Shown: positions 18,374 to 36,086 of the stretch, one piece after another | Position numbering within the stretch: position 1 is the first letter of the stretch | Layout: the number at the start of each line of letters is the position of its first letter | IMG/VR virus record: IMGVR_UViG_3300042564_002819 | Span: 1 to 64,000 of that record | Reading direction: 5' to 3' (one strand) | Length of the DNA: 64,000 bases | Notes under the pieces: model-generated | What the model saw: only the letters and a program-made list of their open reading frames with translations | Told to the model about the DNA's origin: nothing | The model's database searches: none | Position numbers and translations under genes: made by a program

Positions 18374-18374
18374 T

Positions 18375-18809: not shown

Positions 18810-18987
18810 GATTTACAACTTAATAGCACGTCTAGAAGAAAAGATTAACAATTTAATCAACTCTACTGAAAGACAAGAGCAAGAATTAACTTTGCTTAGA
18901 AATGAATTCGAACTTGTTAAAAACGAAGGTTGTTGGCTTTCTAAACAAAATCCAGATCATGTACACGGAGATTTTAAACATGAATAA
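18790..18987 (+). CDS. Small coiled-coil hypothetical protein
   Basis: 65 aa, overlap-coupled on both sides. Confidence 0.6.
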   Translation: MHDKDLEIYNLIARLEEKINNLINSTERQEQELTLLRNEFELVKNEGCWLSKQNPDHVHGDFKHE

Positions 18988-21241: not shown

Positions 21242-21649
21242 ATGGATCAGTTTGATATTACTGAATTTGCTAAAATGTTTGACGCAGCACTTGCGTCAGA
21301 CAACCCAGCAGTTAAAAAAGCACTGCGTAACTTTATGATGGTAGCTGCCATTGTTCATGCTCAAGAATTAAATGAAGATGAACGACTAATGGGTCCATTC
21401 GAGGCATTGCTTAAAAAAGTACAATCTCTTGAGAGCATGGTGCGAGAATTACAAAACAATCGTACATACAAAGACCAATATAAAGATTATTATAATTCCA
21501 ATCCAACTTGGGTATATCAACCTACCACAAGCATAAGCACTACTAGCGGTACTTCCAGTGACGCTAAAACTTGGAAAGGTACGTACAACGGCCAACCAAT
21601 CGACCCTTCTGAGATCTATGAGTTATTGAAAGATTTAAAATTTAAATGA
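21242..21649 (+). CDS. Hypothetical protein
   Basis: ATG at 21242 after AAGGAG. Confidence 0.7.
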   Translation: MDQFDITEFAKMFDAALASDNPAVKKALRNFMMVAAIVHAQELNEDERLMGPFEALLKKVQSLESMVRELQNNRTYKDQYKDYYNSNPTWVYQPTTSISTTSGTSSDAKTWKGTYNGQPIDPSEIYELLKDLKFK

Positions 21650-23211
21650 AAACAAATCTAACAGAAACACAAAACGACTACGCTGTATTCTTGCCTAGTA
21701 TCAGCGGCTTTTACGCTACATTCGTAGGCAAACAACGTTATGGAGAATATGTAGATCCGACTCGTGTTCCTGAAGGCATTGGTGAAGTAGAAGCATTAAA
21801 CTTTTTAAACCCAAGCAAAGGAGCCTTCCATTATAAGTGGGCTCTTTATAGTGCTGGACATGCGGAACTTGATACTGCTAAATTTAGTGAAAAAGAAGAT
21901 ATGCTACGCAACCGTGATAGAAACAACAGTTGGTTGCTAGGAGACTCGGGCGGGTTCCAGATTGCTAAAGGACTTTGGGAGGGCGACTGGACTGATCCAA
22001 ACTGCCCTAAAGCACAAAAGAAACGTGAATTAGTTGTAAACTGGATGGAAGCATACATGGACTATGGCATGATGCTGGATATTCCAACTTGGACTTTCCA
22101 AGATAAGAAAGCTGCAAAAGCAGCCAATATTCACAGTTATCAAGATGCAGTTGATGCTACTCACATTAACGCAAGATATTACATGGCTAATCGTCGTGGT
22201 AACTTTAAAGTGCTGAACGTATTGCAAGGCAGCAATCATGCAGATGCCGACAACTGGTATAACGAATTTAAAGATTATTGTGATCCTAAAAAATATCCAG
22301 AAACACATTTTAATGGGTGGGCTATGGGTGGCCAGAACATGTGTGATGTACATTTAATTTTACGTCGACTTGTACACATGATACACGATGGGTTGCTTGA
22401 GACTGGCGTTCACGATGTTATGCACTTCTTAGGCACTAGCAAATTAGAATGGGCAGTACTGCTTACTGACATTCAACGTGCTGTTAGAAAATATCACAAT
22501 CCTAACTTTATGATTACATACGACTGTGCAAGTCCATTCCTTGCTACTGCAAACGGACAGGTGTATCACAGCATTAGAATCGAAGATCGAGGCAAGTGGA
22601 GTTATATGATGAGTCCAAGTGCAGACGACAAGAAATATGCTACTGATACAAGACCTTTTAAAGATGCCGTTGAACAAGATGGTATATTAGAAGCATTTGA
22701 GGATTCGCCTATAAGCAAGCATCTACAAATCAAAGATGTTTGTATCTATAAACCAGGAGACCTAAATAAAGTAGGCAACGAAGGCAGAACCAGCTGGGAT
22801 AGCTTTAGCTATGCACTGCAAATGGGACACAATGTTTGGATGCATATCGAAAGTACGCAACGTGCAAATGAAAAATACGATGAAGGATTATTTCCTTACA
22901 TGTTAATAAATGAAAAGTTTGAAAGAACTACATTTAAAGATCTTGTAGATGAAATTTTTAGTCTAAAAGATAGAGCCAAGAGTCTTAAATTAATTGACGA
23001 CAATAGTAGATTTTGGATGCAGGTGATAGGAACTAGACTTAACGTTGGTAAAAAAGCTGTCAATGCTCTTACAAATTATCAAAAATTAACTGAAGAGTCA
23101 CACACAGAAATTACTAGCGAAATGCTCAGCGAAGAAGAATTAGCTCGTTGGGAGAAGAAAAAAATCAAAACAAAGTCGTATATGCCAAATGATCTATGGG
23201 AGAATAGTTAA
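21646..23211 (+). CDS. dpdA: DpdA-like 7-deazaguanine DNA transglycosylase (TGT fold)
   Basis: LLGDSGGFQI TGT motif, MMLDIP, LNVLQG, GWAMGG, MHFLG, ITYDCASP; clustered with folE, queE and a queD-like gene. Confidence 0.78.
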   Translation: MKTNLTETQNDYAVFLPSISGFYATFVGKQRYGEYVDPTRVPEGIGEVEALNFLNPSKGAFHYKWALYSAGHAELDTAKFSEKEDMLRNRDRNNSWLLGDSGGFQIAKGLWEGDWTDPNCPKAQKKRELVVNWMEAYMDYGMMLDIPTWTFQDKKAAKAANIHSYQDAVDATHINARYYMANRRGNFKVLNVLQGSNHADADNWYNEFKDYCDPKKYPETHFNGWAMGGQNMCDVHLILRRLVHMIHDGLLETGVHDVMHFLGTSKLEWAVLLTDIQRAVRKYHNPNFMITYDCASPFLATANGQVYHSIRIEDRGKWSYMMSPSADDKKYATDTRPFKDAVEQDGILEAFEDSPISKHLQIKDVCIYKPGDLNKVGNEGRTSWDSFSYALQMGHNVWMHIESTQRANEKYDEGLFPYMLINEKFERTTFKDLVDEIFSLKDRAKSLKLIDDNSRFWMQVIGTRLNVGKKAVNALTNYQKLTEESHTEITSEMLSEEELARWEKKKIKTKSYMPNDLWENS

Positions 23212-23436
23212 ATGAGTAATTATGAAGATGAAAACGACAAGTTAAAAGCCCATCTAGAAGAACTAAAAAGAAAACACAAAGATTTAGATACTTACATTAA
23301 ATCAGAATTTAATAATCAAAATTTAATTCCAGAAGTATATAAATTAAAAACACAAAAGCTATGGCTCAAAGATGAGATACACAGAATTGAAAACAAGTTA
23401 TTAAATTCCGGTAATATTGTAAATGGTACTGTCTGA
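23212..23436 (+). CDS. Small coiled-coil protein (DUF465/YdcH-like)
   Basis: L.RKH..LD..I.......LK.QKLWLKDEI pattern. Confidence 0.6.
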   Translation: MSNYEDENDKLKAHLEELKRKHKDLDTYIKSEFNNQNLIPEVYKLKTQKLWLKDEIHRIENKLLNSGNIVNGTV

Positions 23437-23596
23437 AAAAAGTTTAAAATTAGAAGCATTAGAAATTGCTTTAAAAGATTTAGATCGTATAATAGAAGCA
23501 TTAAAATCTCAAGAATATCCGCAAGAACAGATAAACGAATACGTTAAGAAACGCTGGGCTGTTTGGAATGAAATATATCAGGTAAGAAAATTATGA
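23423..23596 (+). CDS. Small hypothetical protein (57 aa, not in ORF track)
   Basis: Manual translation MVLSEKSLKLEALEIALKDL...WNEIYQVRKL*; fills the gap and couples by ATGA to the next gene. Confidence 0.6.
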   Translation: MVLSEKSLKLEALEIALKDLDRIIEALKSQEYPQEQINEYVKKRWAVWNEIYQVRKL

Positions 23597-24123
23597 AAAG
23601 AATTTATGAACAGGGAATAGAAGAACAAATACAATACTTTTTTGGTACTGAAGTAGAACACACTCCTGCATTTGGTAAAAAGACTTTGTTTGTAGTAGGA
23701 ATAAAAGATCCAGACGAAGTCACAGCAATTGCAAATTCAAATAGCGTTGATCATATCTATCTAGGTGCAAATCAAAGTTTTTCTATAACAGGTGAGCATG
23801 GTACTAACGAAGAAATAGAAGGATGGGAGAAACTAGCTATTAGCCTTTTAAAACAAGGATTTTGGGTTACGTTAGATTTTGATATACGTTATGTTGAATG
23901 GATATTAGAATCTGGCTTTACAGAATACAATCGTTTCATTCCAATGATATCTGCAAAGTTGCCTTATATTTCGCAACTTGGTTACAATGCATGTCTAAAA
24001 TTAGACGATAAAGATTTTGATGCAACAAATCCCGGTGTATGGACACACAGAGTACACGATTTGTTAGATAAAGATGTATTTACGGATTGGTCTAAGTATA
24101 CAACTGATACTATTATTAGTTGA
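23593..24123 (+). CDS. Uncharacterised protein embedded in the 7-deazaguanine cluster
   Basis: 176 aa; FFGTEVEHTP, TLFVVG, HIYLGANQSF, FIPMISAKLP, KLDD.DF..TNPGVW. Confidence 0.7.
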   Translation: MKRIYEQGIEEQIQYFFGTEVEHTPAFGKKTLFVVGIKDPDEVTAIANSNSVDHIYLGANQSFSITGEHGTNEEIEGWEKLAISLLKQGFWVTLDFDIRYVEWILESGFTEYNRFIPMISAKLPYISQLGYNACLKLDDKDFDATNPGVWTHRVHDLLDKDVFTDWSKYTTDTIIS

Positions 24124-24599
24124 CAAATGTATACGAGCGTAGTAGTATGAATTATCAAGAGCATTATTACACTTACATAGCTAGAAAACTAAGAGAAGAG
24201 AGAATGAATCAACCATTAAAAAGTATTTGGGTTACCTTCCGAAAAGAAGGCATACACTTGTATCCTGCCGCAGCAACAGATCCCAAACTTGCAACCGGTG
24301 ACTGGGACGATGTGTCGTTCCTAGGTGTTCCGCATAGGCACATTTTTCACTTTAAAGTTCGTATCGAAGTATTTCACGATGATCGAGATATTGAATTTAT
24401 TCAATTCAAGCGTTGGCTTGAAAAACTGTACAACGAAGACATTCTAGAACTTAATCACAAAAGTTGCGAAATGATCAGCGATGACTTGTATCAAGAAATT
24501 TCTGCAAGGTATCCGGGCCGCCTTGTCGAAATCGAAGTCTCCGAAGACGGAGAAAATGGCTCAATAATTTTTTATCCCACTAACAGTAACGCCACTTAA
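24120..24599 (+). CDS. QueD-like T-fold protein with LxxxHRHxF motif (DpdL-like candidate)
   Basis: FLGVPHRHIFHFKV replaces the QueD CxxxHGH motif; IEFIQFK, SCEM, VSEDGENG. True start probably downstream (24147 or 24204). Confidence 0.7.
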   Translation: MTNVYERSSMNYQEHYYTYIARKLREERMNQPLKSIWVTFRKEGIHLYPAAATDPKLATGDWDDVSFLGVPHRHIFHFKVRIEVFHDDRDIEFIQFKRWLEKLYNEDILELNHKSCEMISDDLYQEISARYPGRLVEIEVSEDGENGSIIFYPTNSNAT

Positions 24600-24611
24600 A
24601 GGAGAAATTAC

Positions 24612-24806
24612 ATGGCAATTACTAACCCTACCGTTAACAAAGTGTTTTCGGACCTTGAAGAGTTTCGTAACTTTTGTCGATTTGAAGGGCATGTGTTTAA
24701 CGAAGCAGATTTGTATAAGTCTGACGCTAGAGCGTGGCAGGCATTTACAAAGCACAGGAATTGGCTTCGTGCAAAGTCAAGAGTAAAGGTAAAGCGTAAT
24801 GCGTAA
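24612..24806 (+). CDS. Small hypothetical protein
   Basis: 64 aa after AAGGAG; DLEEFRNFCRFEGHVFNEADLY. Confidence 0.7.
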   Translation: MAITNPTVNKVFSDLEEFRNFCRFEGHVFNEADLYKSDARAWQAFTKHRNWLRAKSRVKVKRNA

Positions 24807-25962
24807 ACTATTCTATATGGGTTTAGAACCATATGAGGGTAGATACACACTTCAGTTAGAAGATTGGAGCCGTAAGGTCTTTGAACGCCGTGGCATTGAG
24901 TATATCTCGGTGCCCGGTGTTACCATTGATAACACCAAGTCTATCCAAGTTGGTCAAGTGCTTGACGCACATGGACGCTCATTCTTTAGTATGAGCCAAA
25001 TGATGAATCTTGTACAAATGATGCGTAACGGCGAAGTAACTGGCGAAGATGTAGTATTCTTTGAAGATATGTTTCAACCCGGTATCGAATCTCTTCCTTA
25101 CATTATGGATCAGATTCCAGTAGAACAGCGTCCAAAGGTTTGGGTACGTTGTCTAGCACAAACTGTTGACCCTGACGACTTTGTACACGTTTGGGGTATG
25201 AGCAAATGGATGAGTTTGTATGAAGCAATGACTAATGAATTTGTTACTGGCGTTCTTGCTAGTAATGAAGAAATGGTTGCTAATATGAAAATTGCTAACT
25301 GGCGAGCTCCTATTTACAACGTTAGCGGGCTTGCTTTTGGCAAAGAAGAAGTACAAGGTCGTGTGAAAGATATCAAACCTTGGATTGAACGTGCTAATCG
25401 TGTGGTATTTGCTGCACGGTGGGATCAAGAAAAACAACCAGACTTTTACATGGATATTGTAGAACAATGTGCAAATCACTATGTAGAATTTGCAGTCTTA
25501 CAAGGTGGCCCTCTACGTTCAAACAATCCTAAATACATTGAACGTGCAAGAGCTTTAGAAGCGGCAGGTAAACTTAAGATCTACGAAAATCTTAAGAAAA
25601 ACGACTACTACAATATTCTAAACGATAGTCGGGTGATGTTTAACTGTGCTTTGCAAGACTGGACTAGTAATACTGTTAGTGAAGCAGATGCACTTGGTTG
25701 CAATGTTCTGTTTCCTGCTTATCGCAGTTTTCCAGAAATCTTTGCAAACGATCATACAAGAATGTATGTTCCGTGGAGTAAAGAAGATGCTATGAACAAA
25801 TTGTATGCATTGCTAAAAGCACCGCATATGGATATTGGAAAGATTAGCGATTGGACCGATGCTACTATTGATCGTTACATTGACATTATGCAAGGTAACG
25901 GTGAACAATGGCGTCGTGACACTAATCGCTACAGAGACTTTGTATCGGAGAAGAAGTATTGA
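24799..25962 (+). CDS. Glycosyltransferase, GT-B fold
   Basis: C-terminal VVFAARWDQEKQP..F, YY..L.DSRV.FN...D..S.TV.EA.ALG..VL.P...SFPE pattern of GT-B (GT1/GT4-like) enzymes. Confidence 0.78.
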   Translation: MRKLFYMGLEPYEGRYTLQLEDWSRKVFERRGIEYISVPGVTIDNTKSIQVGQVLDAHGRSFFSMSQMMNLVQMMRNGEVTGEDVVFFEDMFQPGIESLPYIMDQIPVEQRPKVWVRCLAQTVDPDDFVHVWGMSKWMSLYEAMTNEFVTGVLASNEEMVANMKIANWRAPIYNVSGLAFGKEEVQGRVKDIKPWIERANRVVFAARWDQEKQPDFYMDIVEQCANHYVEFAVLQGGPLRSNNPKYIERARALEAAGKLKIYENLKKNDYYNILNDSRVMFNCALQDWTSNTVSEADALGCNVLFPAYRSFPEIFANDHTRMYVPWSKEDAMNKLYALLKAPHMDIGKISDWTDATIDRYIDIMQGNGEQWRRDTNRYRDFVSEKKY

Positions 25963-26825
25963 AAGTTTTGGTCACAGGAGCAACTGGTTATATTGGAAGC
26001 CACGTTTGCAAAATCTTAAAAGAACACGGGCACTATGTAGAGGCTTGGGATATTAACTTTTGGGGGGAATATAACGACATTTCTGCATACTGTGATCAAT
26101 TTTATCATTACGATGTAACTAAAAACGTAAAAGGTGAATTTGACGCAGTTGTGCATCTTGCTGGAAGAAGTTTAGTCGAACCTAGTATGCGAACTCCTAC
26201 AGAATATTATTTTACTAATATTCTCGGTACTTCTAACATGCTCGACTGTGTAAAAACTGGCCACTTTATTTTTGCTAGTACTAGCAGTGCTTGGGAAATG
26301 GCATCGCCTTATGCTCGCAGTAAAGTTGCGGCAGAAGATATTATTAAAGAAAAAGCTGCCGGTTATACTATTTTTAGATTTTTTAACGTAAGTGGAACAA
26401 ATGGCATCCATAGACAGCTATGTGCTCCGTCTCATCTCATACATGTAGCTGCCTTAGTTGCAGCAGGTAAACGTCCATATATTAACGTTTACGGAACAGA
26501 CTATTCTACTCGTGATGGTACTTGTATCCGCGATTACGTACATGTAGTCGATCTTGCAACCGCTATTGTAAAGGCAGTGGAAACTGGTCCTAAAAACACT
26601 CCTTATGAGTGCCTAGGCAGTAATCACGGGTGGACTGTGTTAGAAGTATTAGATACCATGGAACGTGTAACTGGTATTAATATTAATAGAATTTACGCAG
26701 ATCGTCGCCCAGGCGATGCAGTTTCTTCAGTTGTTGATAAACTAAGCGACTTTATTACTTTAGAAAAAACAATCGAAGATATGTGCTTAGACCAGTATAA
26801 CTTTGAAAGATCACGAAATGGATAA
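25959..26825 (+). CDS. galE: UDP-glucose 4-epimerase-like NAD-dependent epimerase
   Basis: VTGATGYIGSH, VHLAG, YARSK (YxxxK), FRFFNV.G, YGTDYSTRDGTCIRDYVHV.DLA, RRPGD. Confidence 0.88.
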   Translation: MKVLVTGATGYIGSHVCKILKEHGHYVEAWDINFWGEYNDISAYCDQFYHYDVTKNVKGEFDAVVHLAGRSLVEPSMRTPTEYYFTNILGTSNMLDCVKTGHFIFASTSSAWEMASPYARSKVAAEDIIKEKAAGYTIFRFFNVSGTNGIHRQLCAPSHLIHVAALVAAGKRPYINVYGTDYSTRDGTCIRDYVHVVDLATAIVKAVETGPKNTPYECLGSNHGWTVLEVLDTMERVTGININRIYADRRPGDAVSSVVDKLSDFITLEKTIEDMCLDQYNFERSRNG

Positions 26826-27147
26826 TGACGAATTTTTAAAACAGTATGAATTTATATTTTCTAACGAGGACGTTATTAATATTGATTTAAATGATATAAC
26901 ATCAAACACAATTACAGTTTCGACAATTGGCGGAACTGACAATGCAGGCCTGGTTATGACCGGCGACGGTTGGCAATGGACAACGCAGTACAACGTAGTG
27001 TTTCAAGATATAATGCCAAGCCTGAGTACTTTAAATAGCATGTGTAAAGAATATCCTGCATTAGAGAAAGCTTATGAAAATTTTAAAACAGTTTACAAAA
27101 TGGTTGAACAAGACTGGAACGGAAAACAAAAAGACAGCAACGCTTAA
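26818..27147 (+). CDS. Hypothetical protein, paralog 1 of the YPAL family
   Basis: C-terminal CKEYPALEKAYENFKTVYKMV. Confidence 0.7.
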   Translation: MDNDEFLKQYEFIFSNEDVINIDLNDITSNTITVSTIGGTDNAGLVMTGDGWQWTTQYNVVFQDIMPSLSTLNSMCKEYPALEKAYENFKTVYKMVEQDWNGKQKDSNA

Positions 27148-27601
27148 AGAAGCATATTCTGGATACAATCCAGAATATGCTTATATGAATCGCAAAAAAA
27201 CAGAGGCAGAAAAGAAGCGTTTAGAAAAATGGACAAAAGAGCTAAAAAGTATGAGTACATACAATAGCAATAATACAAATGTTTATAGTGGAGGTGGCTT
27301 TGGCGGAACAGGTTACGTGTCTGGTTACACTTTGACAAACAGCACTATTACTACTAACACTACAAATTTTTCTGATAGTGCTATTATTATCAATGGCGGA
27401 CCCAACGGTAGTATGAAGGTTGATGTTCCGTTGATTGTAAATGGCAGAGACGTTATGAAAGAACTTGACGAAATGCGTGACGCTCTGTTATTATTAAAAA
27501 GACACGTAAACATGGAAGAAAAGTATCCGCGGCTAAAAGAATTAAAAGATGAGTACGAGCAAGCTCTCGAAAAATACCAAACATTTGAGGCATTAAAATG
27601 A
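27074..27601 (+). CDS. Hypothetical protein, paralog 2 of the YPAL family (start uncertain, possibly 27251)
   Basis: Thr/Gly-rich middle; C-terminal EEKYPRLKELKDEYEQALEKY. Confidence 0.6.
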   Translation: MKILKQFTKWLNKTGTENKKTATLKEAYSGYNPEYAYMNRKKTEAEKKRLEKWTKELKSMSTYNSNNTNVYSGGGFGGTGYVSGYTLTNSTITTNTTNFSDSAIIINGGPNGSMKVDVPLIVNGRDVMKELDEMRDALLLLKRHVNMEEKYPRLKELKDEYEQALEKYQTFEALK

Positions 27602-27894
27602 TACCGGTACATGTAAACTATCAAATACCATATACTAGCAACGGGGATGAACGTGCTCACAATGGCGAAGTGCGAGCAATTAATGGACAGTTACAAGTTT
27701 ACAATGGCTCGTATTTTGTGCCTATACACACTACTGCCTGGGTTGATAATATTGAACTCGGTACTGTTGTAGAATGGTGTAAGCAGAAAATGCAACAGGA
27801 ACTGCGTGAACAAGCGTTGGCAGAACGTTTCCCTGCATTTGCTAAAGCAAAAGAAAACTATGAAATAGTAAAGGCATTAGTTCAACATGAATAA
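27598..27894 (+). CDS. Hypothetical protein, paralog 3 of the YPAL family
   Basis: C-terminal AERFPAFAKAKENYEIVKALV. Confidence 0.7.
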   Translation: MIPVHVNYQIPYTSNGDERAHNGEVRAINGQLQVYNGSYFVPIHTTAWVDNIELGTVVEWCKQKMQQELREQALAERFPAFAKAKENYEIVKALVQHE

Positions 27895-28453
27895 AACTTA
27901 TTACAGTTGGCAAGATGTTGAAACTGCCGCAAGTTGCATTATGCTCAGTATGCAAAAAGATCCCTGGTACCCAGATTGGATTGTAGGATTAAGTCGAGGC
28001 GGATTGCCTCTAGCCACTATTCTAAGTAACCGCCTTGGTGTTCCTATGCAACCTTTAGTTGTTTCTTTACGTGACGGTGAAGCTGGCTGGCAAACTGAAA
28101 CTAATTGCTGGCTTCCAGAACTTGCTTTCGGTTATGTCGAAGTAGAAGAACGTGAAATTTATCGCACCCGTTGGGATATTAGCAAACGAAAAAATATCTT
28201 AATCGTTGATGACATTAACGATACTGGTGCTACGTTCAATTGGATTAAAAAAGATTGGGAATCGAGTGTATTCCCAAATGAACGTGCTGCATGGGATACA
28301 GTATGGGACAAAAACGTTCGATTTGCTGTGATGACACAGAATTGGGGTAGTAGTTTTGAACCAGATTATTGGTGGCACGAAGTAAACAAAGCAGAAAAAG
28401 ATTGTTGGTTAGTATACCCTTGGGAGAAGGAATCATGGCTAAAAAGAACATAA
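27887..28453 (+). CDS. Type I phosphoribosyltransferase (Gpt/HPRT-like)
   Basis: IVGLSRGGL..A, PRPP-binding ILIVDDINDTGATF, WLVYPWE. Confidence 0.85.
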   Translation: MNKTYYSWQDVETAASCIMLSMQKDPWYPDWIVGLSRGGLPLATILSNRLGVPMQPLVVSLRDGEAGWQTETNCWLPELAFGYVEVEEREIYRTRWDISKRKNILIVDDINDTGATFNWIKKDWESSVFPNERAAWDTVWDKNVRFAVMTQNWGSSFEPDYWWHEVNKAEKDCWLVYPWEKESWLKRT

Positions 28454-28830
28454 CCGGACCGTGGACTGATGTAGTTATAGATACAAAAACTTACACTGTA
28501 TTTAAAGATGGTTTTCCTGTCACAGAAGGACATTTGTTGTTTGTTCCTAAAGAAGAAACAATGGAATGTTTAATGGCTTGCTACAAAGCAGCATATGCAT
28601 GGGGCTACGGCTGGATTAATGAAGGTTATTGCGACGGCTACAACATAGGTCAAAATGTAGGCAAAAGTGCAGGACAAACAGTTGATTGGCCTCACATTCA
28701 TTTAATCCCAAGAAGAACCGGCGACATGACAGACCCACGAGGCGGAGTTAGACATGTAATTCCGGAAAGAGGCAATTATAAAAAACACGAATTTGATTGG
28801 GACAATCTGTCTCATGGTCAGGCAGCATAA
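28435..28830 (+). CDS. HIT family hydrolase
   Basis: DGFPVTEGHLLFVPK, GYNIGQN.G.SAGQTVDWPHIHLIPRR.GD; start at 28435. Confidence 0.85.
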   Translation: MAKKNITGPWTDVVIDTKTYTVFKDGFPVTEGHLLFVPKEETMECLMACYKAAYAWGYGWINEGYCDGYNIGQNVGKSAGQTVDWPHIHLIPRRTGDMTDPRGGVRHVIPERGNYKKHEFDWDNLSHGQAA

Positions 28831-28842
28831 GGAGATTATACA

Positions 28843-29055
28843 ATGCAGGAATTAAGAAATACAATGCTTTCAGCTGTTAAGAAACATGCAGAAGCACACA
28901 TCGAAAAGCACCGTGTTAATATCGAAATTTATCTTCGAAATTCTGTCGGAGTTGGCGAGCATAGCGATATTATGGATGCAATTGAAAAAGAATTAGCACA
29001 CATGGCAGAATATGAAGATCATCTTGAAATTCTCGAAAAGTATTTCAAGGAATAA
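28843..29055 (+). CDS. Small hypothetical protein
   Basis: 70 aa after AAGGAG; VGVGEHSDIMDAIEKEL. Confidence 0.75.
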   Translation: MQELRNTMLSAVKKHAEAHIEKHRVNIEIYLRNSVGVGEHSDIMDAIEKELAHMAEYEDHLEILEKYFKE

Positions 29056-29060
29056 AGTTA

Positions 29061-29843
29061 GTGACAAGTATAAAATTATTTGATGTTTTATCCGAAGATG
29101 CTGTTTATAATCTAATTGGACATTGTAAAGAGTGTTGGGATTACACCTATCCTAATAGCCAAGCATTAGAAGAAGCATCATACCGTGCCCTTGCCCCTTT
29201 TTTTAAAAATTGTCAGCATTTAGGAGCAGCTAATACAATTGTTGATGTTCTAATAGATTCAAATGCTCTTGATATTAAAGGATGCAAAAAATTAACACAT
29301 ATAGGAAAAACTAATGAGTCATCGAATCACATTAAAAATAGATTTGTAGAGAAAATTTTACCAGATGGATCAAAGATTATTTTTAAGATCCCTAACCAAA
29401 TCGAAACTATGGTTAAACGACCTAAAAGAGATGTAAACAATTGGTCCGGTGATCCAAAAGGACTTGTAGAGTTGTGTTTAAAAGATTACAACGATTTTGC
29501 ATGGTCGACTGCAAAATCTGCAGGATGTAAAAATCTATACAGTCTTGTAGTATTATACGGGGAAAGCAACGGATACAGATCTATTTATGTTACGTTAAAA
29601 GAATTCTCAGTTCCACAAATCGAAACAGCTATACAAAATTCTAAAAAAAAGTATACTGGCTATGATAAAAACGGAAATGAAGTTTGTTTAATAAAAGTAA
29701 TAAGCACCGGCAGTATTAATATTCACAAATTTTTTGATACATCTGAAGGAGTATTACATACCTATCCTGTAAAAAATGGTGTACCTAAATTTTTTAATAA
29801 ATCAGATCTGTTAATAGATGGACCAATAACAAATATTAAATAA
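29061..29843 (+). CDS. Hypothetical protein, possible PD-(D/E)xK nuclease
   Basis: IVDV...ALDIKG resembles a (P)D..(D/E)xK core; AT-rich; GTG start. Confidence 0.4.
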   Translation: MTSIKLFDVLSEDAVYNLIGHCKECWDYTYPNSQALEEASYRALAPFFKNCQHLGAANTIVDVLIDSNALDIKGCKKLTHIGKTNESSNHIKNRFVEKILPDGSKIIFKIPNQIETMVKRPKRDVNNWSGDPKGLVELCLKDYNDFAWSTAKSAGCKNLYSLVVLYGESNGYRSIYVTLKEFSVPQIETAIQNSKKKYTGYDKNGNEVCLIKVISTGSINIHKFFDTSEGVLHTYPVKNGVPKFFNKSDLLIDGPITNIK

Positions 29844-29874
29844 TTTAAAAAATTACCAAATACTTTAATAAACC

Positions 29875-29903
29875 TTGACAAAAAATCTAAATAATTGTAT
29901 ACT
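29875..29903 (+). promoter_or_regulatory. Sigma70-type promoter for folE-queE-metK
   Basis: TTGACA-17nt-TATACT, near-consensus. Confidence 0.8.
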
Positions 29904-29947
29904 TATAAAGATAGGACATCCTCGTCCTTGATAACTCGGAGAAAGAA

Positions 29948-30634
29948 TTGAAAACTAGTAAAAAAATTAAACAACGCATCGAAGAAGCAGGTGCAAGATA
30001 TTGGGCAGGTGACAATATCAGTGAATATATCAAAGAAGGCGAATTAAACGAACTGATCGACGAACTTACAGAAAAGTTCGAAGATGTTCTCGATAGCCTT
30101 GTTATCGATCGTAAGAACGATCCAAACAGCATGGACACCGGCAGACGTCTTGCAAAAATGTATGTCAAAGAACTTATGGCAGGTCGTTACTACCCAATGC
30201 CCAACGCAACGGCATTTCCGAATCATACTAATGAACCGTATAAAGGTATGTTGGTTGTTCGTAGCGAACTAACAAGCATGTGCAGTCATCATCACCAGCC
30301 TGTTAAAGGTGTAGCATATATCGGTATTATTGCTGCCGATACGCTGATTGGCTTGAGCAAGTATACACGTATTGCACAATGGTGTGCTCGTCGTGGAACA
30401 CTGCAAGAAGAACTTGCAATGGATATTGCTCGTGAAATTAAATCAGCAACTGGTTCAAAAGACGTTGCTGTTTATATTCAGGCTACTCACGGCTGTTGTG
30501 AGAATAGAGGCATTATGGCACACTCAAGCCTAACACAAACAACTGTTCTCGAAGGTGTATTCAAAAGCGATCAAAGTGTTAAAAAAGAATTCTTTGACAA
30601 CATTAAACTACAACAGGAGTTTGCACCAAGATGA
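29948..30634 (+). CDS. folE: GTP cyclohydrolase I
   Basis: DPNS.DTGRRLAKMY, SMCSHHHQP, GLSKY.R, LQEE, H.CC..RG; TTG start after GGAG. Confidence 0.93.
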   Translation: MKTSKKIKQRIEEAGARYWAGDNISEYIKEGELNELIDELTEKFEDVLDSLVIDRKNDPNSMDTGRRLAKMYVKELMAGRYYPMPNATAFPNHTNEPYKGMLVVRSELTSMCSHHHQPVKGVAYIGIIAADTLIGLSKYTRIAQWCARRGTLQEELAMDIAREIKSATGSKDVAVYIQATHGCCENRGIMAHSSLTQTTVLEGVFKSDQSVKKEFFDNIKLQQEFAPR

Positions 30635-30921
30635 AATTTTTGAAAAGACTTGTAGCTAAATGGGTACAAGAAGCACAAGAAGAACGCTACAGTAACGGTA
30701 AAGGCGGAATATTAATTGCAAAAGACGTTGATAGCAACACTGTTAACGACGAGCCTATTCTAAACTTTAGAATTTACAGTGCTCAAAACGGTAAGATTAT
30801 CGAGTTTCATAGATATGATAGAAAGACCGACCGAAGCGATAAATCTGTTTACATTGTTGAAAAAGACAAAGACTTGTCCGAGTATGTGAATAAGTGCCTA
30901 AGCTTGGAGTTGCTGCGATGA
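30631..30921 (+). CDS. Hypothetical protein
   Basis: 96 aa, overlap-coupled between folE and queE. Confidence 0.7.
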   Translation: MKFLKRLVAKWVQEAQEERYSNGKGGILIAKDVDSNTVNDEPILNFRIYSAQNGKIIEFHRYDRKTDRSDKSVYIVEKDKDLSEYVNKCLSLELLR

Positions 30922-31793
30922 TGAAACTACGTTATAGCGAAGCATTTTATTCAGTGCAAGGCGAAGGCCAGTACGTAGGAGTACCTAGTGTATTCCTACG
31001 TACTTTCGGTTGTAACTTTCGTTGTCAAAACTTTGGACTACCTCGTGGCACACCCAAAGGACGTTATAACCCAGAAGTTGCTAAACTTATCGAAGACGGC
31101 GTTCACGAAACTGTAGAAAAGTTTGAAGATTTGCCGCTGGTATTTACAGGCTGTGACACTTATGCAAGTATCTACCCTGAGTTTAGACATCTTGTTATGG
31201 ATAAGACTATCGACGAAGTAGTAGATCATTTGCTAAGTATTACTCCAGAAGGTAAATGGACTATGGATAATGGACAGGATGTTCACCTTATCCTCACAGG
31301 CGGCGAACCGTTACTTGCTTGGCAACGTCTATATATCGAATTATTCGAACATCCAAGAATGGCGGATCTAAAAAATGTTACATTTGAAACAAATACTACA
31401 CAGTGGTTGCACGATGAGTTTAGAGAATACTTGGGAACTCGTGCAAGATTTAGAACAACGTTTAGTTGTAGTCCAAAGTTATCCGTTTCGGGAGAGTCTT
31501 GGACTGATGCTATTAAGCCTAGCGTTGCTCGTCAGTACTACGATATCCCTGGTGTTGATCTTTATCTTAAGTTTGTTGTGGCTGATGACGTGGATGTTGA
31601 GGAAGTTGGCAGAGCCGTTGATGCTTATCGCAGCGAAGGTGTTGAGTGTCCCGTTTATCTCATGCCGATGGGCGGGCGTACAGAAGGCTATAACCTCACT
31701 GTTCAAGAAGTTGCAAAACTTGCTATGGCAAAAGGATGGCGGTTCACCCCAAGACTCCACATTAGTCTATTCGGAAATGCCTGGGGAACTTGA
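30918..31793 (+). CDS. queE: 7-carboxy-7-deazaguanine synthase (radical SAM)
   Basis: EAFYSVQGEG...GVPSVFLRTFGCNFRC, GCDT, LTGGEPLL, ETN, CSPKL, KFVV, LMP.G, PRLH. Confidence 0.9.
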   Translation: MMKLRYSEAFYSVQGEGQYVGVPSVFLRTFGCNFRCQNFGLPRGTPKGRYNPEVAKLIEDGVHETVEKFEDLPLVFTGCDTYASIYPEFRHLVMDKTIDEVVDHLLSITPEGKWTMDNGQDVHLILTGGEPLLAWQRLYIELFEHPRMADLKNVTFETNTTQWLHDEFREYLGTRARFRTTFSCSPKLSVSGESWTDAIKPSVARQYYDIPGVDLYLKFVVADDVDVEEVGRAVDAYRSEGVECPVYLMPMGGRTEGYNLTVQEVAKLAMAKGWRFTPRLHISLFGNAWGT

Positions 31794-31859
31794 TAAAACC
31801 TCCAAATACTTTAGAGGCATACACACAGAAGAACAATTTAATAATCTAAGGAAAGATTT

Positions 31860-32954
31860 ATGAACTATATTTTTACTAGCGAAAGTGTTAGCGACGGACA
31901 CCCGGATAAGATTGCAGACCAAATTTCTGACGCACTAGTCGATGCTGGATTAAAAGCAGGCGACACTACTACTCGTGTTGCAATCGAGACACTTGTAACT
32001 ACCAACCACGTTACGTTGGCGGGCGAAGTAAAGAACTTTAATGTAAGCAAGGACGAAGTAAAAGAAATTGTATGCAATAAAGTTAAAGAGATTGGCTACG
32101 AACAGGATGGGTTTCATTGGGATAAACTAAAAATTTACAATGAAATCCATAGCCAAAGTGCTGATATTGCACTAGGTACAGATACATTCGGTGCAGGCGA
32201 TCAAGGCATTATGTTTGGTTATGCATGTAATCATACAGATAGTTACATGCCGGCACCCATTCATTATGCTCATAAAATTTTGCATGAACTCAAAGACCTG
32301 CGTAAAACCAACAATATACTCGGGCCCGATGCTAAATCACAAGTTAGTGTAGAATATAATGGTGCAAGACGTGAGGGTATTATTAAACGTATTGACCAAA
32401 TTGTTATTAGCACACAACATACAGAAGGTAATGTTAACGAAGCTCGTGAACTTGCTAAACAAGCTGCATACAATGTATTAGGAGATTTAATTGACGAAAA
32501 TACAGTATGGCATCTCAATCCTACTGGCAATTTTGTTATCGGTGGACCCGACGGTGACGCCGGTGTTACTGGACGAAAGATTATCGTTGATACTTATGGC
32601 GGCTTTGCTCCTCATGGCGGCGGCGCCTTTAGTGGCAAGGATCCAACGAAAGTGGATAGAAGTGCAGCGTACATGGCACGATGGTTAGCTAAAAACGTTG
32701 TAGCAGACGAAATGGCAGACTGGTGTAATATTCAACTATCATATGCTATCGGTGTTAAACAACCTACTAGTATTCTTATTGATAGTAATGGCCATAATCG
32801 CAGTATCGAACAGTTTATTCGTAACGAAATTGATTTAAGTCCAAAAGGTATTATTGATAGATTTGATTTGTTTAACTTTCATAAGTATAGTGAAAATTGT
32901 GTATATGGACATTTTGGAGACAAAGATGTGCCGTGGGAAAGAATCGGATGGTAA
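31860..32954 (+). CDS. metK: S-adenosylmethionine synthetase
   Basis: FTSESVSDGHPDK, GAGDQG, GGP.GDAGVTGRKIIVDTYGG..PHGGGAFSGKDPTKVDRS. Confidence 0.96.
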   Translation: MNYIFTSESVSDGHPDKIADQISDALVDAGLKAGDTTTRVAIETLVTTNHVTLAGEVKNFNVSKDEVKEIVCNKVKEIGYEQDGFHWDKLKIYNEIHSQSADIALGTDTFGAGDQGIMFGYACNHTDSYMPAPIHYAHKILHELKDLRKTNNILGPDAKSQVSVEYNGARREGIIKRIDQIVISTQHTEGNVNEARELAKQAAYNVLGDLIDENTVWHLNPTGNFVIGGPDGDAGVTGRKIIVDTYGGFAPHGGGAFSGKDPTKVDRSAAYMARWLAKNVVADEMADWCNIQLSYAIGVKQPTSILIDSNGHNRSIEQFIRNEIDLSPKGIIDRFDLFNFHKYSENCVYGHFGDKDVPWERIGW

Positions 32955-35695: not shown

Positions 35696-36086
35696 AAATA
35701 TATATACAAAAATTTTTTTACAACAATTAGGAAAATCTGTTTCAGAAGCAGCTATTGCAGAAGCTTTACCTCTGTGGTGGCAAAACACGAGAGATAAAAA
35801 AGAAGGCGGGCTCGGGTTAACCGAAACTGGTTTTAATACTGTCAAAGAAATAGGTATCGAGTTTTACGAAATACCGTTTCCGTTAGATATGCCACTTACT
35901 GCACAAGTTATGATATATCTTGATCGATACATAGACAGTCCATATTACTTAACTAAGAAAAGTGTTTTTGTTACAAATGAAAAAAAGGCTGTAGAACTAA
36001 CACTGTTTAGTGGCGACATCAGAAAGTATGGACTTGCAAAAGCAATGAGGCGTCCTAGCGAAGATCAGGATGAACATAATTTATAA
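35688..36086 (+). CDS. Hypothetical protein
   Basis: ORF coupled to the previous gene; LGLTETGF, YLDRYIDSPYYL. Confidence 0.7.
   Translation: MNKNIYTKIFLQQLGKSVSEAAIAEALPLWWQNTRDKKEGGLGLTETGFNTVKEIGIEFYEIPFPLDMPLTAQVMIYLDRYIDSPYYLTKKSVFVTNEKKAVELTLFSGDIRKYGLAKAMRRPSEDQDEHNL

What the first reader, a model, noticed from the sequence alone, without database searches (positions are those of the whole stretch)
21646..32954. 7-deazaguanine DNA-modification cluster with an embedded glycosyltransferase and GalE: candidate glycosylated deazaguanine base
Seen: dpdA-like (DSGGFQ), queD-like, folE, queE and metK, with a GT-B glycosyltransferase and a GalE-like epimerase in one tightly coupled run between the queD-like gene and folE. 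Known: FolE, QueD and QueE make 7-carboxy-7-deazaguanine from GTP, and DpdA inserts deazaguanine bases into phage DNA as anti-restriction; sugars on a deazaguanine are known in tRNA (galactosyl- and mannosyl-queuosine), and I know of none in phage DNA. Inference: the GT with UDP-Gal from GalE may hypermodify the inserted base, by analogy to T4 glucosyl-hmC.
Basis: partly seen in the sequence, partly recalled or inferred. Interest (0 to 1): 0.85.

Follow-up and report, generated by a model that had tools for sequence, protein, structure and literature searches.

The report
Sugar transferase inside deazaguanine DNA-modification cluster
An uncultured giant phage carries the genes that replace guanine in its DNA with 7-deazaguanine, and wired into them is a virus-only sugar-adding enzyme that travels with this pathway in many unrelated phages, so these phages may carry a sugar-decorated deazaguanine, a DNA base not yet described.

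Summary
Window 21646-32954 encodes a TGT-fold DpdA-like protein with DSGGFQ, FolE, QueE and MetK, plus a GT-B (GT4-type) glycosyltransferase directly followed by a GalE-type epimerase.

The "queD-like" gene is really DpdL, carrying the published LxxxHRHxF signature. DpdL is the proposed 7-carboxy-7-deazaguanine decarboxylase of phiST-type phages. The window has no canonical QueD. A purine phosphoribosyltransferase, a HIT protein and upstream sugar-nucleotide genes also belong to the neighbourhood.

The main new result is linkage. The glycosyltransferase family appears virus-only (891 clusters at 50% identity).
- DpdL is detected in 76-79 of 80 related viral contigs.
- It lies within about 3.5 kb of the GT in all six groups of cultured phages that have the GT: PA5oct, Phosso, ACP17, X1/BUDD, BCSR5 and BUCT-ZZ01.
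- It is next to the GT in 9 of 11 deeply divergent metagenomic representatives.

DpdL also occurs without the GT; phiST has no GT and its DNA is plain dDG. The GT therefore looks like an optional add-on layer.

I found no paper in the library searched that mentions this enzyme or a glycosylated deazaguanine in DNA. The sugar, the acceptor atom and the order of steps remain inferred.

The parts
18360..18809 (+). Sugar-1-phosphate nucleotidylyltransferase-like protein (149 aa). Peripheral; possible donor-sugar supply.
   Evidence: phrog_7878 'heptose 1-phosphate adenylyltransferase' 2e-34. Present in 38 of 73 lineage loci that reach this position.
18902..19702 (+). HAD-IIB phosphomannomutase-type sugar phosphate mutase (266 aa). 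Peripheral.
   Evidence: Pfam PMM 3e-26; TIGR01484 HAD-IIB. Present in 25 of 73 lineage loci.
19645..20454 (+). NDP-sugar dehydrogenase lacking the C-terminal domain (269 aa). Peripheral.
   Evidence: Pfam UDPG_MGDP_dh central domain 5e-25. TIGR03026 matches model positions 70-295 of 413. Two stop codons follow, so it is not read through into the next ORF.
20503..21231 (+). Conserved unknown protein g246, directly upstream of the module.
   Evidence: phrog_12062 6e-33. Present in 73 of 74 lineage loci. Homologue of PA5oct EST35_0314, annotated as a virion 'structural protein' by MS.
21646..23211 (+). DpdA-like DNA-guanine transglycosylase candidate (521 aa, TGT fold, DSGGFQ motif).
   Evidence: Motif seen. 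Invariant G99 D100 S101 G103 Q105 in 38 homologues. Model pLDDT 89.7. Top 19 PDB fold matches are all TGT/ArcTGT/QTRT1. Present in 76 of 80 lineage loci. 34% identical to PA5oct EST35_0316.
23212..23436 (+). DUF465 small protein (74 aa).
   Evidence: Pfam DUF465 3.7e-6. Present in 21 of 80 loci.
23593..24123 (+). Conserved unknown protein g176, a module member of unknown fold.
   Evidence: Present in 72 of 80 lineage loci. Homologues in the ACP17 cluster (L002:7239-7724) and metagenomic L090. No Pfam, PHROG or PDB match. More than 7500 clusters, all 'hypothetical'.
24120..24599 (+). DpdL, the QueD-paralogous T-fold protein and proposed CDG decarboxylase.
   Evidence: LGVPHRHIF matches LxxxHRHxF. 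phrog_17812 5e-34. Homologous to phiST DpdL. Invariant H46 L68 H72 H74 F76 H86 R89 E92 S115-C116-E117 E142. The family profile's best PDB hit is PH0634 (2dj6/2dtt), which I recall from memory to be a PTPS/QueD homologue; E 0.015 over the full length.
24612..24806 (+). Small conserved ORF g64 between DpdL and the GT; it overlaps the GT start by 8 nt.
   Evidence: Present in 53 of 80 loci; coordinates.
24799..25962 (+). GT4-type (GT-B, retaining-type) glycosyltransferase found only in viral sequence. This is the focus of the finding.
   Evidence: Model pLDDT 95.9. Fold matches BshA, MshA, GlgM, LmbT, glycogen synthase and PimA at E about 1e-11. Invariant R207, E211, K212 and D287-x7-E295 align with GT4 donor-site motifs. 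891 clusters at 50% identity. DpdL adjacency is documented.
25959..26825 (+). GalE-type UDP-hexose 4-epimerase (288 aa, a shortened copy). Its start overlaps the GT stop by 4 nt.
   Evidence: Pfam Epimerase 3e-32. TIGR01179 194.5 bits, below cut-off. GATGYIG and YARSK motifs present. An SDR follows the GT in 75 of 80 loci, and 7 of 7 tested pass the GalE cut-off.
27887..28453 (+). 6-oxopurine-type phosphoribosyltransferase.
   Evidence: Pfam Pribosyltran 1e-11. Best PDB relatives are archaeal purine PRTs and HGPRT. Homologues in the BUCT-ZZ01 and PA5oct clusters. Present in 41-42 of about 71 loci that reach this position.
28369..28830 (+). HIT-family nucleotide hydrolase/transferase; an accessory gene.
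   Evidence: Pfam HIT 9e-11. PDB HIT proteins and Ap4A phosphorylase. Present in only 11 of 80 loci.
29948..30634 (+). GTP cyclohydrolase I (FolE).
   Evidence: Pfam 5e-39, 134 bits; NCBIfam FolE 9e-43.
30894..31793 (+). QueE-like radical-SAM 7-carboxy-7-deazaguanine synthase.
   Evidence: phrog_2076 2.5e-51. 41% identical to the BUCT-ZZ01 QueE. NCBIfam QueE models match only the N-terminus.
31860..32954 (+). S-adenosylmethionine synthetase (MetK).
   Evidence: All three Pfam MetK domains, 1e-56 to 2e-31. Present in only 9 of 50 loci that reach this position.

Best explanation
The stretch is a DpdL-type 7-deazaguanine DNA-modification module of an uncultured aquatic jumbo phage.

Proposed pathway:
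- FolE and QueE make 7-carboxy-7-deazaguanine (CDG) from GTP. The QueD step must come from elsewhere in the phage genome or from the host.
- DpdL (24120-24599) converts CDG, by published proposal to 7-deazaguanine.
- The 521-aa TGT-fold protein exchanges this base for guanine in DNA.
- The purine phosphoribosyltransferase most simply recycles the released guanine towards GTP.
- MetK supplies SAM.

A GT4-type, NDP-sugar-dependent glycosyltransferase found only in viral sequence is translationally coupled to DpdL. A GalE-type UDP-hexose 4-epimerase follows it. This GT family is almost never seen away from DpdL, so it is a dedicated, optional add-on to the pathway.

Most likely the GT puts a hexose (Gal/Glc type) on the deazaguanine moiety. 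This could happen on the free base handed over by DpdL before insertion, or on the base already in DNA. Either way the virion DNA would carry a glycosylated 7-deazaguanine as an extra shield against nucleases.

Shown: gene identities, folds, conserved catalytic motifs, and the linkage. Inferred: the acceptor atom, the sugar, the order of steps, and that the sugar ends up in DNA.
For: Fold and motifs of the GT:
- High-confidence GT-B model matching retaining GT4 enzymes.
- Invariant R207/E211/K212 and D287-x7-E295 align with the GT4 donor site. This argues for an active enzyme.

Linkage to DpdL and the Que genes:
- 80 IMG/VR loci keep the order DpdA-like, g176, DpdL, GT, GalE, then FolE and QueE.
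- The same triad occurs in PA5oct, ACP17, X1, BUCT-ZZ01, Phosso and BCSR5.
- Among 11 GT representatives only 28-37% identical to the window protein, 9 have DpdL within 2 kb, and most of the longer contigs also carry QueD, QueE and FolE.
- In Phosso the DpdA-like gene lies about 170 kb away, yet DpdL and the GT stay adjacent. This points to a DpdL-GT partnership.

Distribution:
- A motif-pattern scan of 185,579 species genomes found only 6 hits. All are MAG contigs, and five of the six show the viral synteny; the sixth is a partial GT match at a contig end.

Add-on pattern:
- DpdL occurs without the GT in phiST, RHph_I1_18, Ahp1, D479, Bakedbeans and MA9V-3.
- GT-less rows are scattered on the DpdL tree.

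Donor supply:
- GalE follows the GT.
- A nucleotidylyltransferase, a mutase and an NDP-sugar dehydrogenase lie upstream.

Published context:
- Reconstitution of dDG with only DpdA plus DpdL from phiST and ACP17 failed, and the authors suggested that unknown enzymes may be missing (PMC10516641).
- PA5oct DNA has a modified G of undetermined identity (PMC12191111).
Against: - 7-deazaguanine has no hydroxyl, and CDG offers only a carboxylate. An O-glycoside like glucosyl-hmC is therefore not chemically obvious.
- phiST reaches 100% dDG with DpdL and no GT.
- DpdL's own activity has never been demonstrated.
- The nearest structural relatives of the GT (BshA, MshA, LmbT, SenB, BGluT) glycosylate small molecules. 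T4 AGT and BGT are not among the top 50 matches.
- No canonical QueD is present in the window.
- Two QueC-like PP-loop ORFs (55444-57014) lie 24 kb downstream, so the base may not stop at CDG or DG.
- Two short divergent GT contigs (L107, L109) show no DpdL in the little sequence available.
- No DNA composition data exist for any GT-bearing phage.
Confidence: 0.5

Rival explanations
1. The GT acts on a small-molecule intermediate and the sugar is not retained in DNA. For example, it could form a transient glycosyl ester of CDG that helps DpdL-dependent decarboxylation. Alternatively it could make a glycosylated pterin or deazapurine metabolite as a side branch from the FolE product, as cyanobacteria make biopterin glucoside.
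For: - The best fold matches are small-molecule GT4 enzymes, including the UDP-glucose:tetrahydrobiopterin glucosyltransferase 5ze7 at rank 28.
- The GT is coupled to DpdL rather than to DpdA, even where DpdA is distant, as in Phosso.
- The DpdA plus DpdL reconstitution failed.
Against: - phiST makes dDG without this GT, so the GT is not needed for decarboxylation in general.
- A metabolite branch would not explain why the GT is seen only inside clusters that also carry QueE and a transglycosylase.
- A dedicated GalE and sugar-nucleotide genes suggest stoichiometric sugar use.
Confidence: 0.2
2. A nucleotide-level route. The phosphoribosyltransferase converts the deazaguanine base into a nucleotide, as TubE and ToyH do in tubercidin and toyocamycin synthesis (recalled from the literature). 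Modification, possibly including glycosylation, then happens on nucleotides before polymerisation. The TGT-fold protein would play a minor or different role.
For: - A purine-type PRTase recurs in the clusters of the window lineage, BUCT-ZZ01 and PA5oct.
- GT-less DpdL phages carry a dNMP-kinase-like gene, and phiST also a MazG-like gene, beside DpdL.
- phiST-type phages replace G completely, which is typical of pool-level replacement.
Against: - The TGT-fold protein with an intact DSGGFQ motif is conserved in 76 of 80 loci.
- The published view is that all known deazaguanine DNA modifications are post-replicative.
- The PRTase is absent from ACP17, X1 and many metagenomic clusters.
- Guanine salvage explains the PRTase more simply.
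Confidence: 0.1
3. The GT glycosylates a different target in nucleic acid or protein, and is merely co-regulated with the replication and modification genes. Possible targets are another modified base (hmC- or hmU-type) or a virion protein.
For: - Generic resemblance to phage GT4-like proteins annotated as DNA alpha-glucosyltransferases.
- g246, next to the module, is homologous to a PA5oct virion protein.
Against: - No thymidylate-synthase-like hydroxymethylase, TET/JBP or base kinase family appeared in Pfam scans of about 80 window ORFs.
- This reading does not explain the specific, repeated adjacency to DpdL in myo-, podo- and sipho-like contigs.
Confidence: 0.08
4. The GT, GalE and the upstream sugar-nucleotide genes remodel the host envelope (LPS, capsule, superinfection exclusion). 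They sit next to the deazaguanine genes by chance.
For: - Phages often carry GT4 enzymes and GalE for surface modification.
- JGI names some homologues 'glycosyltransferase involved in cell wall biosynthesis'.
- A more distant GT4 relative in PhiXhv-12 sits with GlmS and a BshB-like deacetylase and has no DpdL nearby.
Against: - Chance adjacency cannot account for DpdL next to the GT in the window lineage, six cultured phage groups and 9 of 11 divergent metagenomic clusters.
- The family is absent from cellular genomes.
- There is translational coupling from DpdL through g64 and the GT to GalE.
Confidence: 0.07

Closest known systems
phiST-type dDG system (DpdA3 + DpdL + FolE/QueD/QueE; Cui, Hutinet et al., NAR 2023, PMC10516641)
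   Same: It has DpdL with the LxxxHRHxF signature and all invariant residues. It has FolE and QueE, a TGT-superfamily transglycosylase, and no QueC in the cluster.
   Different: - The window adds a GT4 enzyme, GalE, g176 and a PRTase.
- Its transglycosylase is 521 aa. tblastn against the phage collection returned no Cellulophaga or Campylobacter phage, so it shows no detectable similarity to phiST-type DpdA3. It groups with PA5oct instead.
- phiST has a P-loop kinase-like gene where the GT would be.
- The window has no canonical QueD.
T-even phage glucosyl-hydroxymethylcytosine (T4 alpha- and beta-glucosyltransferases)
   Same: The logic is the same: a modified base plus an optional GT-B sugar layer using a UDP-sugar. 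The sugar layer is patchily distributed among related phages.
   Different: - The base is a purine analogue inserted by base exchange, not a pyrimidine made at nucleotide level.
- No hydroxymethyl handle is evident.
- The GT resembles GT4 enzymes, and T4 AGT and BGT are not among the top 50 fold matches.
Galactosyl- and mannosyl-queuosine in eukaryotic tRNA (QTGAL, QTMAN; recalled from the literature)
   Same: A sugar on a 7-deazaguanine derivative in a nucleic acid. QTMAN is, as I recall, a GT-B enzyme.
   Different: In tRNA the sugar goes on the cyclopentenediol hydroxyl of queuosine. This cluster has no genes for that side chain (no QueA, QueG or QueF). The target would be DNA, in a virus.
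Bacterial Dpd system and phage DpdA1/DpdA2 systems (dPreQ0, dADG, dG+)
   Same: GTP is converted to CDG by FolE, QueD and QueE, and a TGT-family enzyme inserts the base into DNA.
   Different: Those systems need QueC and make nitrile, amide or amidine derivatives. Here DpdL replaces QueC in the cluster, and a GT is present.
Tubercidin and toyocamycin biosynthesis (TubE/ToyH phosphoribosyltransferases; recalled from the literature)
   Same: FolE, a QueD-like protein, QueE and a type I PRTase occur in one cluster.
   Different: Those pathways make free nucleoside antibiotics in Streptomyces and have no transglycosylase. The substrate of the PRTase here is untested.
Cyanobacterial pteridine glycosyltransferase BGluT (PDB 5ze7)
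   Same: A GT4 fold acting downstream of FolE and a PTPS-family T-fold enzyme, with an SDR in the pathway. It appears among the fold matches (rank 28).
   Different: The resemblance is only generic GT4 similarity (E 6.6e-10, 11% identity). BGluT pathways lack QueE and a transglycosylase.

Membership tests
TGT/DpdA superfamily (DNA- or tRNA-guanine transglycosylases) | TGT-type TIM-barrel fold | tested here: met
   The model has pLDDT 89.7. The top 19 PDB matches are all bacterial TGT, archaeosine TGT or human/mouse QTRT1, with E 1.5e-6 to 6e-4 and target TM about 0.5. Cap10 follows.
TGT/DpdA superfamily (DNA- or tRNA-guanine transglycosylases) | Conserved catalytic Asp in the D-S-G-G-F-Q motif | tested here: met
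   LLGDSGGFQ is at residues 97-105. G99 D100 S101 G103 Q105 are invariant in 38 homologues. Equivalence to the TGT Asp102 motif rests on my knowledge of Z. mobilis TGT.
TGT/DpdA superfamily (DNA- or tRNA-guanine transglycosylases) | Sequence-profile match to Pfam TGT (PF01702) or to an annotated phage TGT | tested here: not met
   No Pfam, PHROG or NCBIfam hit. The profile found no TGT in the PDB. hhalign against the X1 TGT gave probability 2%. There is only a weak tblastn hit (5e-6) to the 'TGT domain' protein of Vibrio phage GR7B.
TGT/DpdA superfamily (DNA- or tRNA-guanine transglycosylases) | Base-exchange activity on DNA | not testable with these tools
   Needs enzymology or DNA mass spectrometry.
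DpdA3 subfamily (phiST and Campylobacter phage type) | Detectable sequence similarity to phiST or CP220 DpdA3 | tested here: not met
   tblastn of the 521-aa protein against 50,697 phage records returned no Cellulophaga or Campylobacter phage. It groups with PA5oct, Phosso and Vibrio 2.275.O instead.
DpdL (proposed CDG decarboxylase) | Signature LxxxHRHxF replacing the CxxxHGH of QueD | tested here: met
   LGVPHRHIF is present. The signature is as given in PMC10516641. L68, H72, H74 and F76 are invariant in 18 family members.
DpdL (proposed CDG decarboxylase) | Homology to phiST DpdL (CGPG_00067) | tested here: met
   tblastn 2e-6, 32% identity; jackhmmer 2.5e-31.
DpdL (proposed CDG decarboxylase) | T-fold / PTPS-QueD relationship | tested here: inconclusive
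   The family profile's only PDB match is PH0634 (2dj6/2dtt), which I recall from memory to be a PTPS/QueD homologue (the PDB lists it as a hypothetical protein). E is 0.015 over the full length. The single sequence gives nothing. No structure was predicted.
DpdL (proposed CDG decarboxylase) | Context: FolE, QueE and a DpdA present, QueC absent | tested here: inconclusive
   FolE, QueE and the DpdA-like protein are present and there is no QueC in the cluster. However, two divergent QueC-like PP-loop ORFs lie at 55444-57014.
CAZy GT4-like retaining GT-B glycosyltransferases | GT-B two-Rossmann fold closest to GT4 members | tested here: met
   pLDDT 95.9. BshA, MshA, GlgM, PimA and glycogen synthase match at E about 1e-11, probability 1.00.
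CAZy GT4-like retaining GT-B glycosyltransferases | Donor-site motifs (Arg/Lys phosphate binders and E-x7-E) | tested here: met
   SRxDxEKxP (R207, E211, K212 invariant) aligns with GRLDHNKNP of WlaC. D287-x7-E295 aligns with the E-x7-E region of GlgM.
CAZy GT4-like retaining GT-B glycosyltransferases | Pfam Glycos_transf_1 above the gathering score | tested here: not met
   24.4 bits against a cut-off of 26.4. Many homologues do carry the precomputed PF00534 label.
T4-type DNA glucosyltransferases (AGT, BGT) | Specific structural or sequence similarity to T4 AGT or BGT | tested here: not met
   Neither is among the top 50 PDB matches. Viral proteins annotated 'DNA alpha-GT' match only at the generic level, with TM about 0.5.
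UDP-glucose 4-epimerase GalE (TIGR01179) | Score above the equivalog cut-off | tested here: not met
   The window copy scores 194.5 against 262.3. The orthologous neighbours in 7 of 7 related loci score 294-334. The window gene is therefore a shortened GalE-type SDR.
UDP-glucose 4-epimerase GalE (TIGR01179) | NAD-binding GxxGxxG and catalytic YxxxK | tested here: met
   GATGYIG and YARSK are present in the translation.
QueE (7-carboxy-7-deazaguanine synthase) | Family-level profile match | tested here: met
   phrog_2076 'QueE-like radical SAM' 2.5e-51 over the full length. It is 41% identical to the BUCT-ZZ01 QueE. NCBIfam QueE models match only residues 12-75 and fall below cut-off. The Cys triad was not examined.

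The most novel reading that the evidence does not exclude
DpdL plus this GT define a new and very abundant DNA hypermodification: a hexosyl (or other glycosyl) 7-deazaguanine. It would be the first sugar-bearing purine analogue in any natural DNA. The sugar might be joined through unusual chemistry, such as a C7 C-glycoside formed on decarboxylation or an acyl glycoside of CDG. The modification would be present in cultured phages such as PA5oct, ACP17, Xanthomonas X1, Phosso and BUCT-ZZ01, and in thousands of aquatic jumbo-phage lineages.
Probability: 0.4. Interest if true: 0.92.

Novelty: new variant of a known kind. Interest (0 to 1): 0.8.

Why it matters
- **A new DNA base.** All natural glycosylated DNA bases I know of are pyrimidines (hmC, hmU/base J, 5-hydroxycytosine derivatives; from my own knowledge, apart from the 2026 paper title on glycosylated 5-hydroxycytosine listed). 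A sugar on a deazapurine would be a new chemical class of DNA base and probably new glycosyltransferase chemistry.
- **Abundance.** The gene family is large: more than 8000 clusters at 90% identity, including Tara Oceans samples.
- **Reach into studied phages.** It occurs in phages already used in research and therapy-related work. One is the PA5oct group, whose modified G is still unidentified.
- **A possible explanation for a published failure.** dDG synthesis could not be reconstituted from DpdA plus DpdL of ACP17. The ACP17 cluster holds the GT and a g176 homologue that were left out.
- **Practical consequences.** These include resistance to restriction enzymes, CRISPR nucleases and modification-dependent nucleases. 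Sequencing of such DNA may be biased, and new enzymes for DNA labelling may become available.

Tried and rejected
**Searches that found nothing**
- Megablast of the region against 50,697 phage records: no match.
- Single-sequence and profile searches of the DpdA-like protein against PDB sequences, and hhalign against the annotated TGT of phage X1: no signal. Only the fold comparison worked.
- Single-protein pattern scans of IMG/VR with three divergent GT representatives: nothing found. I used exact-sequence contig look-ups instead.
- The 70-sequence GT alignment was too diverse for the genome scan. A 12-sequence alignment worked.
- The g176 family gave no match to PDB sequences, Pfam, PHROGs or NCBIfam. 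Every database homologue is 'hypothetical'.
- The 2024 MMBR review on 7-deazaguanines could not be read.

**Ideas considered and rejected**
- The Phosso 'glycosylase' next to DpdL is not a g176 homologue.
- The NDP-sugar dehydrogenase might be read through a stop into the next ORF. Rejected: two stops intervene, and the next ORF is a separate conserved family.
- The 159-aa T-fold protein might be the missing QueD. Rejected: the catalytic Cys position is Leu, and a QueD profile does not hit it.
- The window PP-loop ORF 56259-57014 might match the in-cluster PP-loop protein of X1. No similarity was found.

Full report
**1. What is in the sequence**

The + strand between 21179 and 27147 is an unbroken chain of ORFs that abut or overlap by 4-14 nt. 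More + strand genes follow up to 32954. Family scans and translations give this order:

| Coordinates | Product |
|---|---|
| 21646-23211 | 521-aa protein with LLGDSGGFQ |
| 23212-23436 | DUF465 |
| 23593-24123 | 176-aa unknown (g176) |
| 24120-24599 | 159-aa T-fold-like protein |
| 24612-24806 | 64-aa ORF (g64) |
| 24799-25962 | 387-aa glycosyltransferase |
| 25959-26825 | 288-aa SDR epimerase |
| 26803-27894 | three small unknowns |
| 27887-28453 | phosphoribosyltransferase |
| 28369-28830 | HIT protein |
| 28843-29843 | two unknowns |
| 29948-30634 | FolE |
| 30631-30921 | small ORF |
| 30894-31793 | QueE |
| 31860-32954 | MetK |

**2. The transglycosylase**

The 521-aa protein has no Pfam, PHROG, NCBIfam or PDB-sequence match. 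hhalign against an annotated phage TGT failed. An alignment of 38 homologues keeps G99-D100-S101-G103-Q105 invariant. The AlphaFold model (pLDDT 89.7) finds only tRNA-guanine transglycosylases in its first 19 PDB matches. I therefore accept it as a TGT-superfamily, DpdA-like enzyme. Its nearest cultured relatives are hypothetical proteins of the PA5oct group (34% identity), Phosso and Vibrio phage 2.275.O. The search returned no phiST or Campylobacter phage, so I do not file it under DpdA3.

**3. The "queD-like" gene is DpdL**

The 159-aa protein carries LGVPHRHIF. Cui, Hutinet et al. (PMC10516641) define DpdL by the change of QueD's CxxxHGH to LxxxHRHxF. They propose it as the decarboxylase that turns 7-carboxy-7-deazaguanine (CDG) into 7-deazaguanine. 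In that scheme it occurs in phages that have DpdA, FolE, QueD and QueE but no QueC.

- The window protein is homologous to phiST DpdL.
- It shares all invariant residues of the family, including an S-C-E motif.
- The family profile's only PDB match is PH0634 (E 0.015 over the full length). I recall PH0634 to be a PTPS/QueD homologue.
- A QueD profile built from eight phage QueDs finds no QueD anywhere in the window. It does find QueD in some related contigs.
- In the window, the place where relatives carry QueD is taken by a unique 260-aa ORF.

**4. The glycosyltransferase and epimerase**

The GT scores just under the Pfam cut-off. With 70 diverse homologues it folds at pLDDT 95.9.

- The fold is GT-B. 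The best matches are retaining GT4 enzymes: BshA, MshA, GlgM, LmbT, glycogen synthase, PimA and SenB. The pteridine glucosyltransferase BGluT also appears.
- T4 AGT and BGT are not in the top 50 matches.
- Invariant R207/E211/K212 and D287-x7-E295 align with GT4 donor-site motifs. It looks like an active NDP-sugar transferase.
- The N-terminal (acceptor) half is also strongly conserved: R15, D90, D127, W137 and E142 are invariant. This suggests one specific acceptor across the family.

The SDR after the GT is GalE-like but short (194.5 bits against a cut-off of 262.3). The gene in the same position in seven related loci passes the GalE equivalog cut-off. Immediately upstream of the module lie a sugar-1-phosphate nucleotidylyltransferase-like gene, a phosphomannomutase-type mutase and a truncated NDP-sugar dehydrogenase. 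These are conserved in the nearest relatives.

**5. Linkage, the key result**

The GT family is huge: more than 8000 clusters at 90% identity and 891 at 50% identity.

*Within the window's own lineage*
- 80 IMG/VR loci with 70-90% identical GTs keep the same gene order.
- Counts out of 80 are: DpdA-like 76, g176 71-72, DpdL 76-79, GalE-type 75, FolE 62-65. PRTase and QueE are present where the flank reaches them.

*Cultured phages outside that lineage*
- BUCT-ZZ01: QueE, PRTase, QueD, FolE, then DpdL and the GT.
- ACP17: QueD, FolE, g176-like, DpdA, GT, DpdL, QueE.
- Xanthomonas X1/BUDD: FolE, then GT, TGT, DpdL, QueE.
- PA5oct group: g246, DpdA-like, GT, DpdL, SDR fragment, PRTase, QueE.
- Phosso: DpdL, GT, FolE, QueE, with the DpdA-like gene about 170 kb away.
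- BCSR5: DpdL and the GT are 3 kb apart.

*Divergent metagenomic representatives*
- I looked up eleven representatives only 28-37% identical to the window GT.
- Nine have DpdL within 2 kb, usually with QueD, QueE and FolE alongside. They sit in contigs that look like myo-, podo- and siphoviruses.
- One short contig has a radical-SAM gene next to the GT. One short contig is uninformative.

*Cellular genomes*
- A scan of one genome per 185,579 species found six loci.
- All six are MAG contigs, and five show the viral synteny; the sixth is a partial GT match at a contig end.

*The converse does not hold*
- DpdL occurs without the GT in phiST, RHph_I1_18, Ahp1, D479, Bakedbeans and MA9V-3.
- These GT-less rows are scattered on the poorly resolved DpdL tree. 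For example, Ahp1 pairs with PA5oct at 99/97 support.

A more distant GT4 in the PhiXhv-12 group sits with GlmS and a BshB-like deacetylase and lacks DpdL. I treat it as an outgroup.

**6. Interpretation**

The GT is a dedicated but optional layer on DpdL-type deazaguanine systems. This is the pattern expected of a hypermodifying enzyme, as with glucosylation of hmC among T-even phages. The coupling is to DpdL rather than to DpdA, so the GT may act on DpdL's product before insertion. Action on DNA cannot be excluded.

The chemical problem is real.
- 7-deazaguanine has no hydroxyl.
- CDG has only a carboxylate.
- phiST makes plain dDG without the GT.

Possible answers are an acyl glycoside, a C7 C-glycoside, or an as-yet unknown DpdL product. 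None can be decided from sequence.

The PRTase resembles 6-oxopurine PRTases. It most simply salvages the guanine released by base exchange. A TubE/ToyH-like role on the deazapurine base is a rival.

**7. What is known**

The two main papers on phage deazaguanines do not contain the word glycosyltransferase. I found no paper on a glycosylated deazaguanine in DNA in the library searched.

PA5oct DNA is reported to carry a modified G in GA/GG contexts, and the modification was not identified (PMC12191111). Iyer et al. noted a deazaguanine system in PA5oct (PMC7824862). Cui et al. could not reconstitute dDG from DpdA plus DpdL of phiST and ACP17, and they suspected missing enzymes. The ACP17 cluster contains the GT and a g176 homologue between the genes they used.

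**8. Caveats**

- All functional statements about DpdL, the GT, g176 and the PRTase are inferences.
- The 80 lineage loci are not independent. The independent evidence is the six cultured groups and the eleven divergent representatives.
- Two QueC-like PP-loop ORFs with a CGxCxxCxxR-type ending lie at 55444-57014, inside a radical-SAM-rich region. They could extend the pathway beyond CDG.
- The window comes from a jumbo myophage. Its PolB is nearest to Phosso, Atu_ph07 and Rak2-like phages.

**Verdict**

I classify the finding as a new variant of a known kind of system. It is of high interest because cultured phages with and without the GT are available for a decisive mass-spectrometry test.

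Noticed in passing
window 46744-63916, both strands: There are at least ten radical-SAM ORFs in 17 kb: two with B12-binding domains, two with SPASM, one 'twitch' type. The Pfam summary also lists one more radical-SAM hit, an Asp/Arg-hydroxylase-like hit and a HiPIP-like hit, whose ORFs are not localised. This density is extraordinary for a phage. MetK at 31860-32954 may serve this region as much as QueE.
   Followed up: partly
window 55444-56250 and 56259-57014 (+): Two paralogous PP-loop ATPases (SGGxDS) end in C..CWWCRERxWG. The second reads CGTCWWCRER, like the CGxCxxCxxR zinc motif of QueC (recalled from memory). One ORF of the batch gave a weak Pfam QueC hit (7.9e-5). They could tailor the CDG carboxylate, so 'no QueC' is true only for the cluster itself.
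   Followed up: partly
L086 (phiST) 7296-7793; L105 (Vibrio phage D479) 7543-8088: GT-less DpdL phages carry a P-loop dNMP-kinase-like gene beside DpdL and the roughly 260-290-aa DpdA3-size protein. phiST also carries a MazG-like gene there. This hints that part of that pathway may run at nucleotide level.
   Followed up: no
window 29061-29843 (+): This 260-aa ORF has no homologue in any of about 100 related loci. It sits between the HIT gene and FolE, where some relatives carry a canonical QueD. It may be a replacement or insertion.
   Followed up: partly
window 20503-21231 (+); L084 5903-6649: The g246 family (phrog_12062) is conserved just upstream of the DpdA-like gene in 73 of 74 lineage loci. 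It is homologous to a PA5oct protein annotated as a virion structural protein by mass spectrometry. A packaged protein next to a DNA-modification module is unexplained.
   Followed up: partly
window 4704-5516 and 6002-8260 (+): The phage encodes a DnaJ (J domain plus C-terminal domain) and a 752-aa ClpB/Hsp104-type double-AAA chaperone.
   Followed up: no
window 36070-39304 (+): A sulfotransferase-like ORF, a MoxR-type AAA ATPase and a DUF2201 metallopeptidase/VWA protein lie in a row.
   Followed up: no
window 43005-45600 (+): A 423-aa PP-loop ATPase (weak TilS/NadE/LarE-like hits) is followed by a saccharopine-dehydrogenase-like protein. Function unknown.
   Followed up: no
L097-L102 (GTDB genome contigs): Contigs binned into MAGs named Phycisphaerae, Haliscomenobacter, Chitinophagales, Rickettsiales and Chloroflexi carry the GT. 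In five of the six the full viral synteny (PolB, g246, DpdA-like, g176, DpdL, GT) is visible. They look like phage contigs mis-binned into bacterial genomes.
   Followed up: partly
L096 (Xanthomonas phage PhiXhv-12) 5735-8969: A more distant GT4 relative sits with GlmS and a BshB-like N-acetylglucosaminyl deacetylase and has no Que genes nearby. This may be a different glycosylation system based on glucosamine.
   Followed up: no
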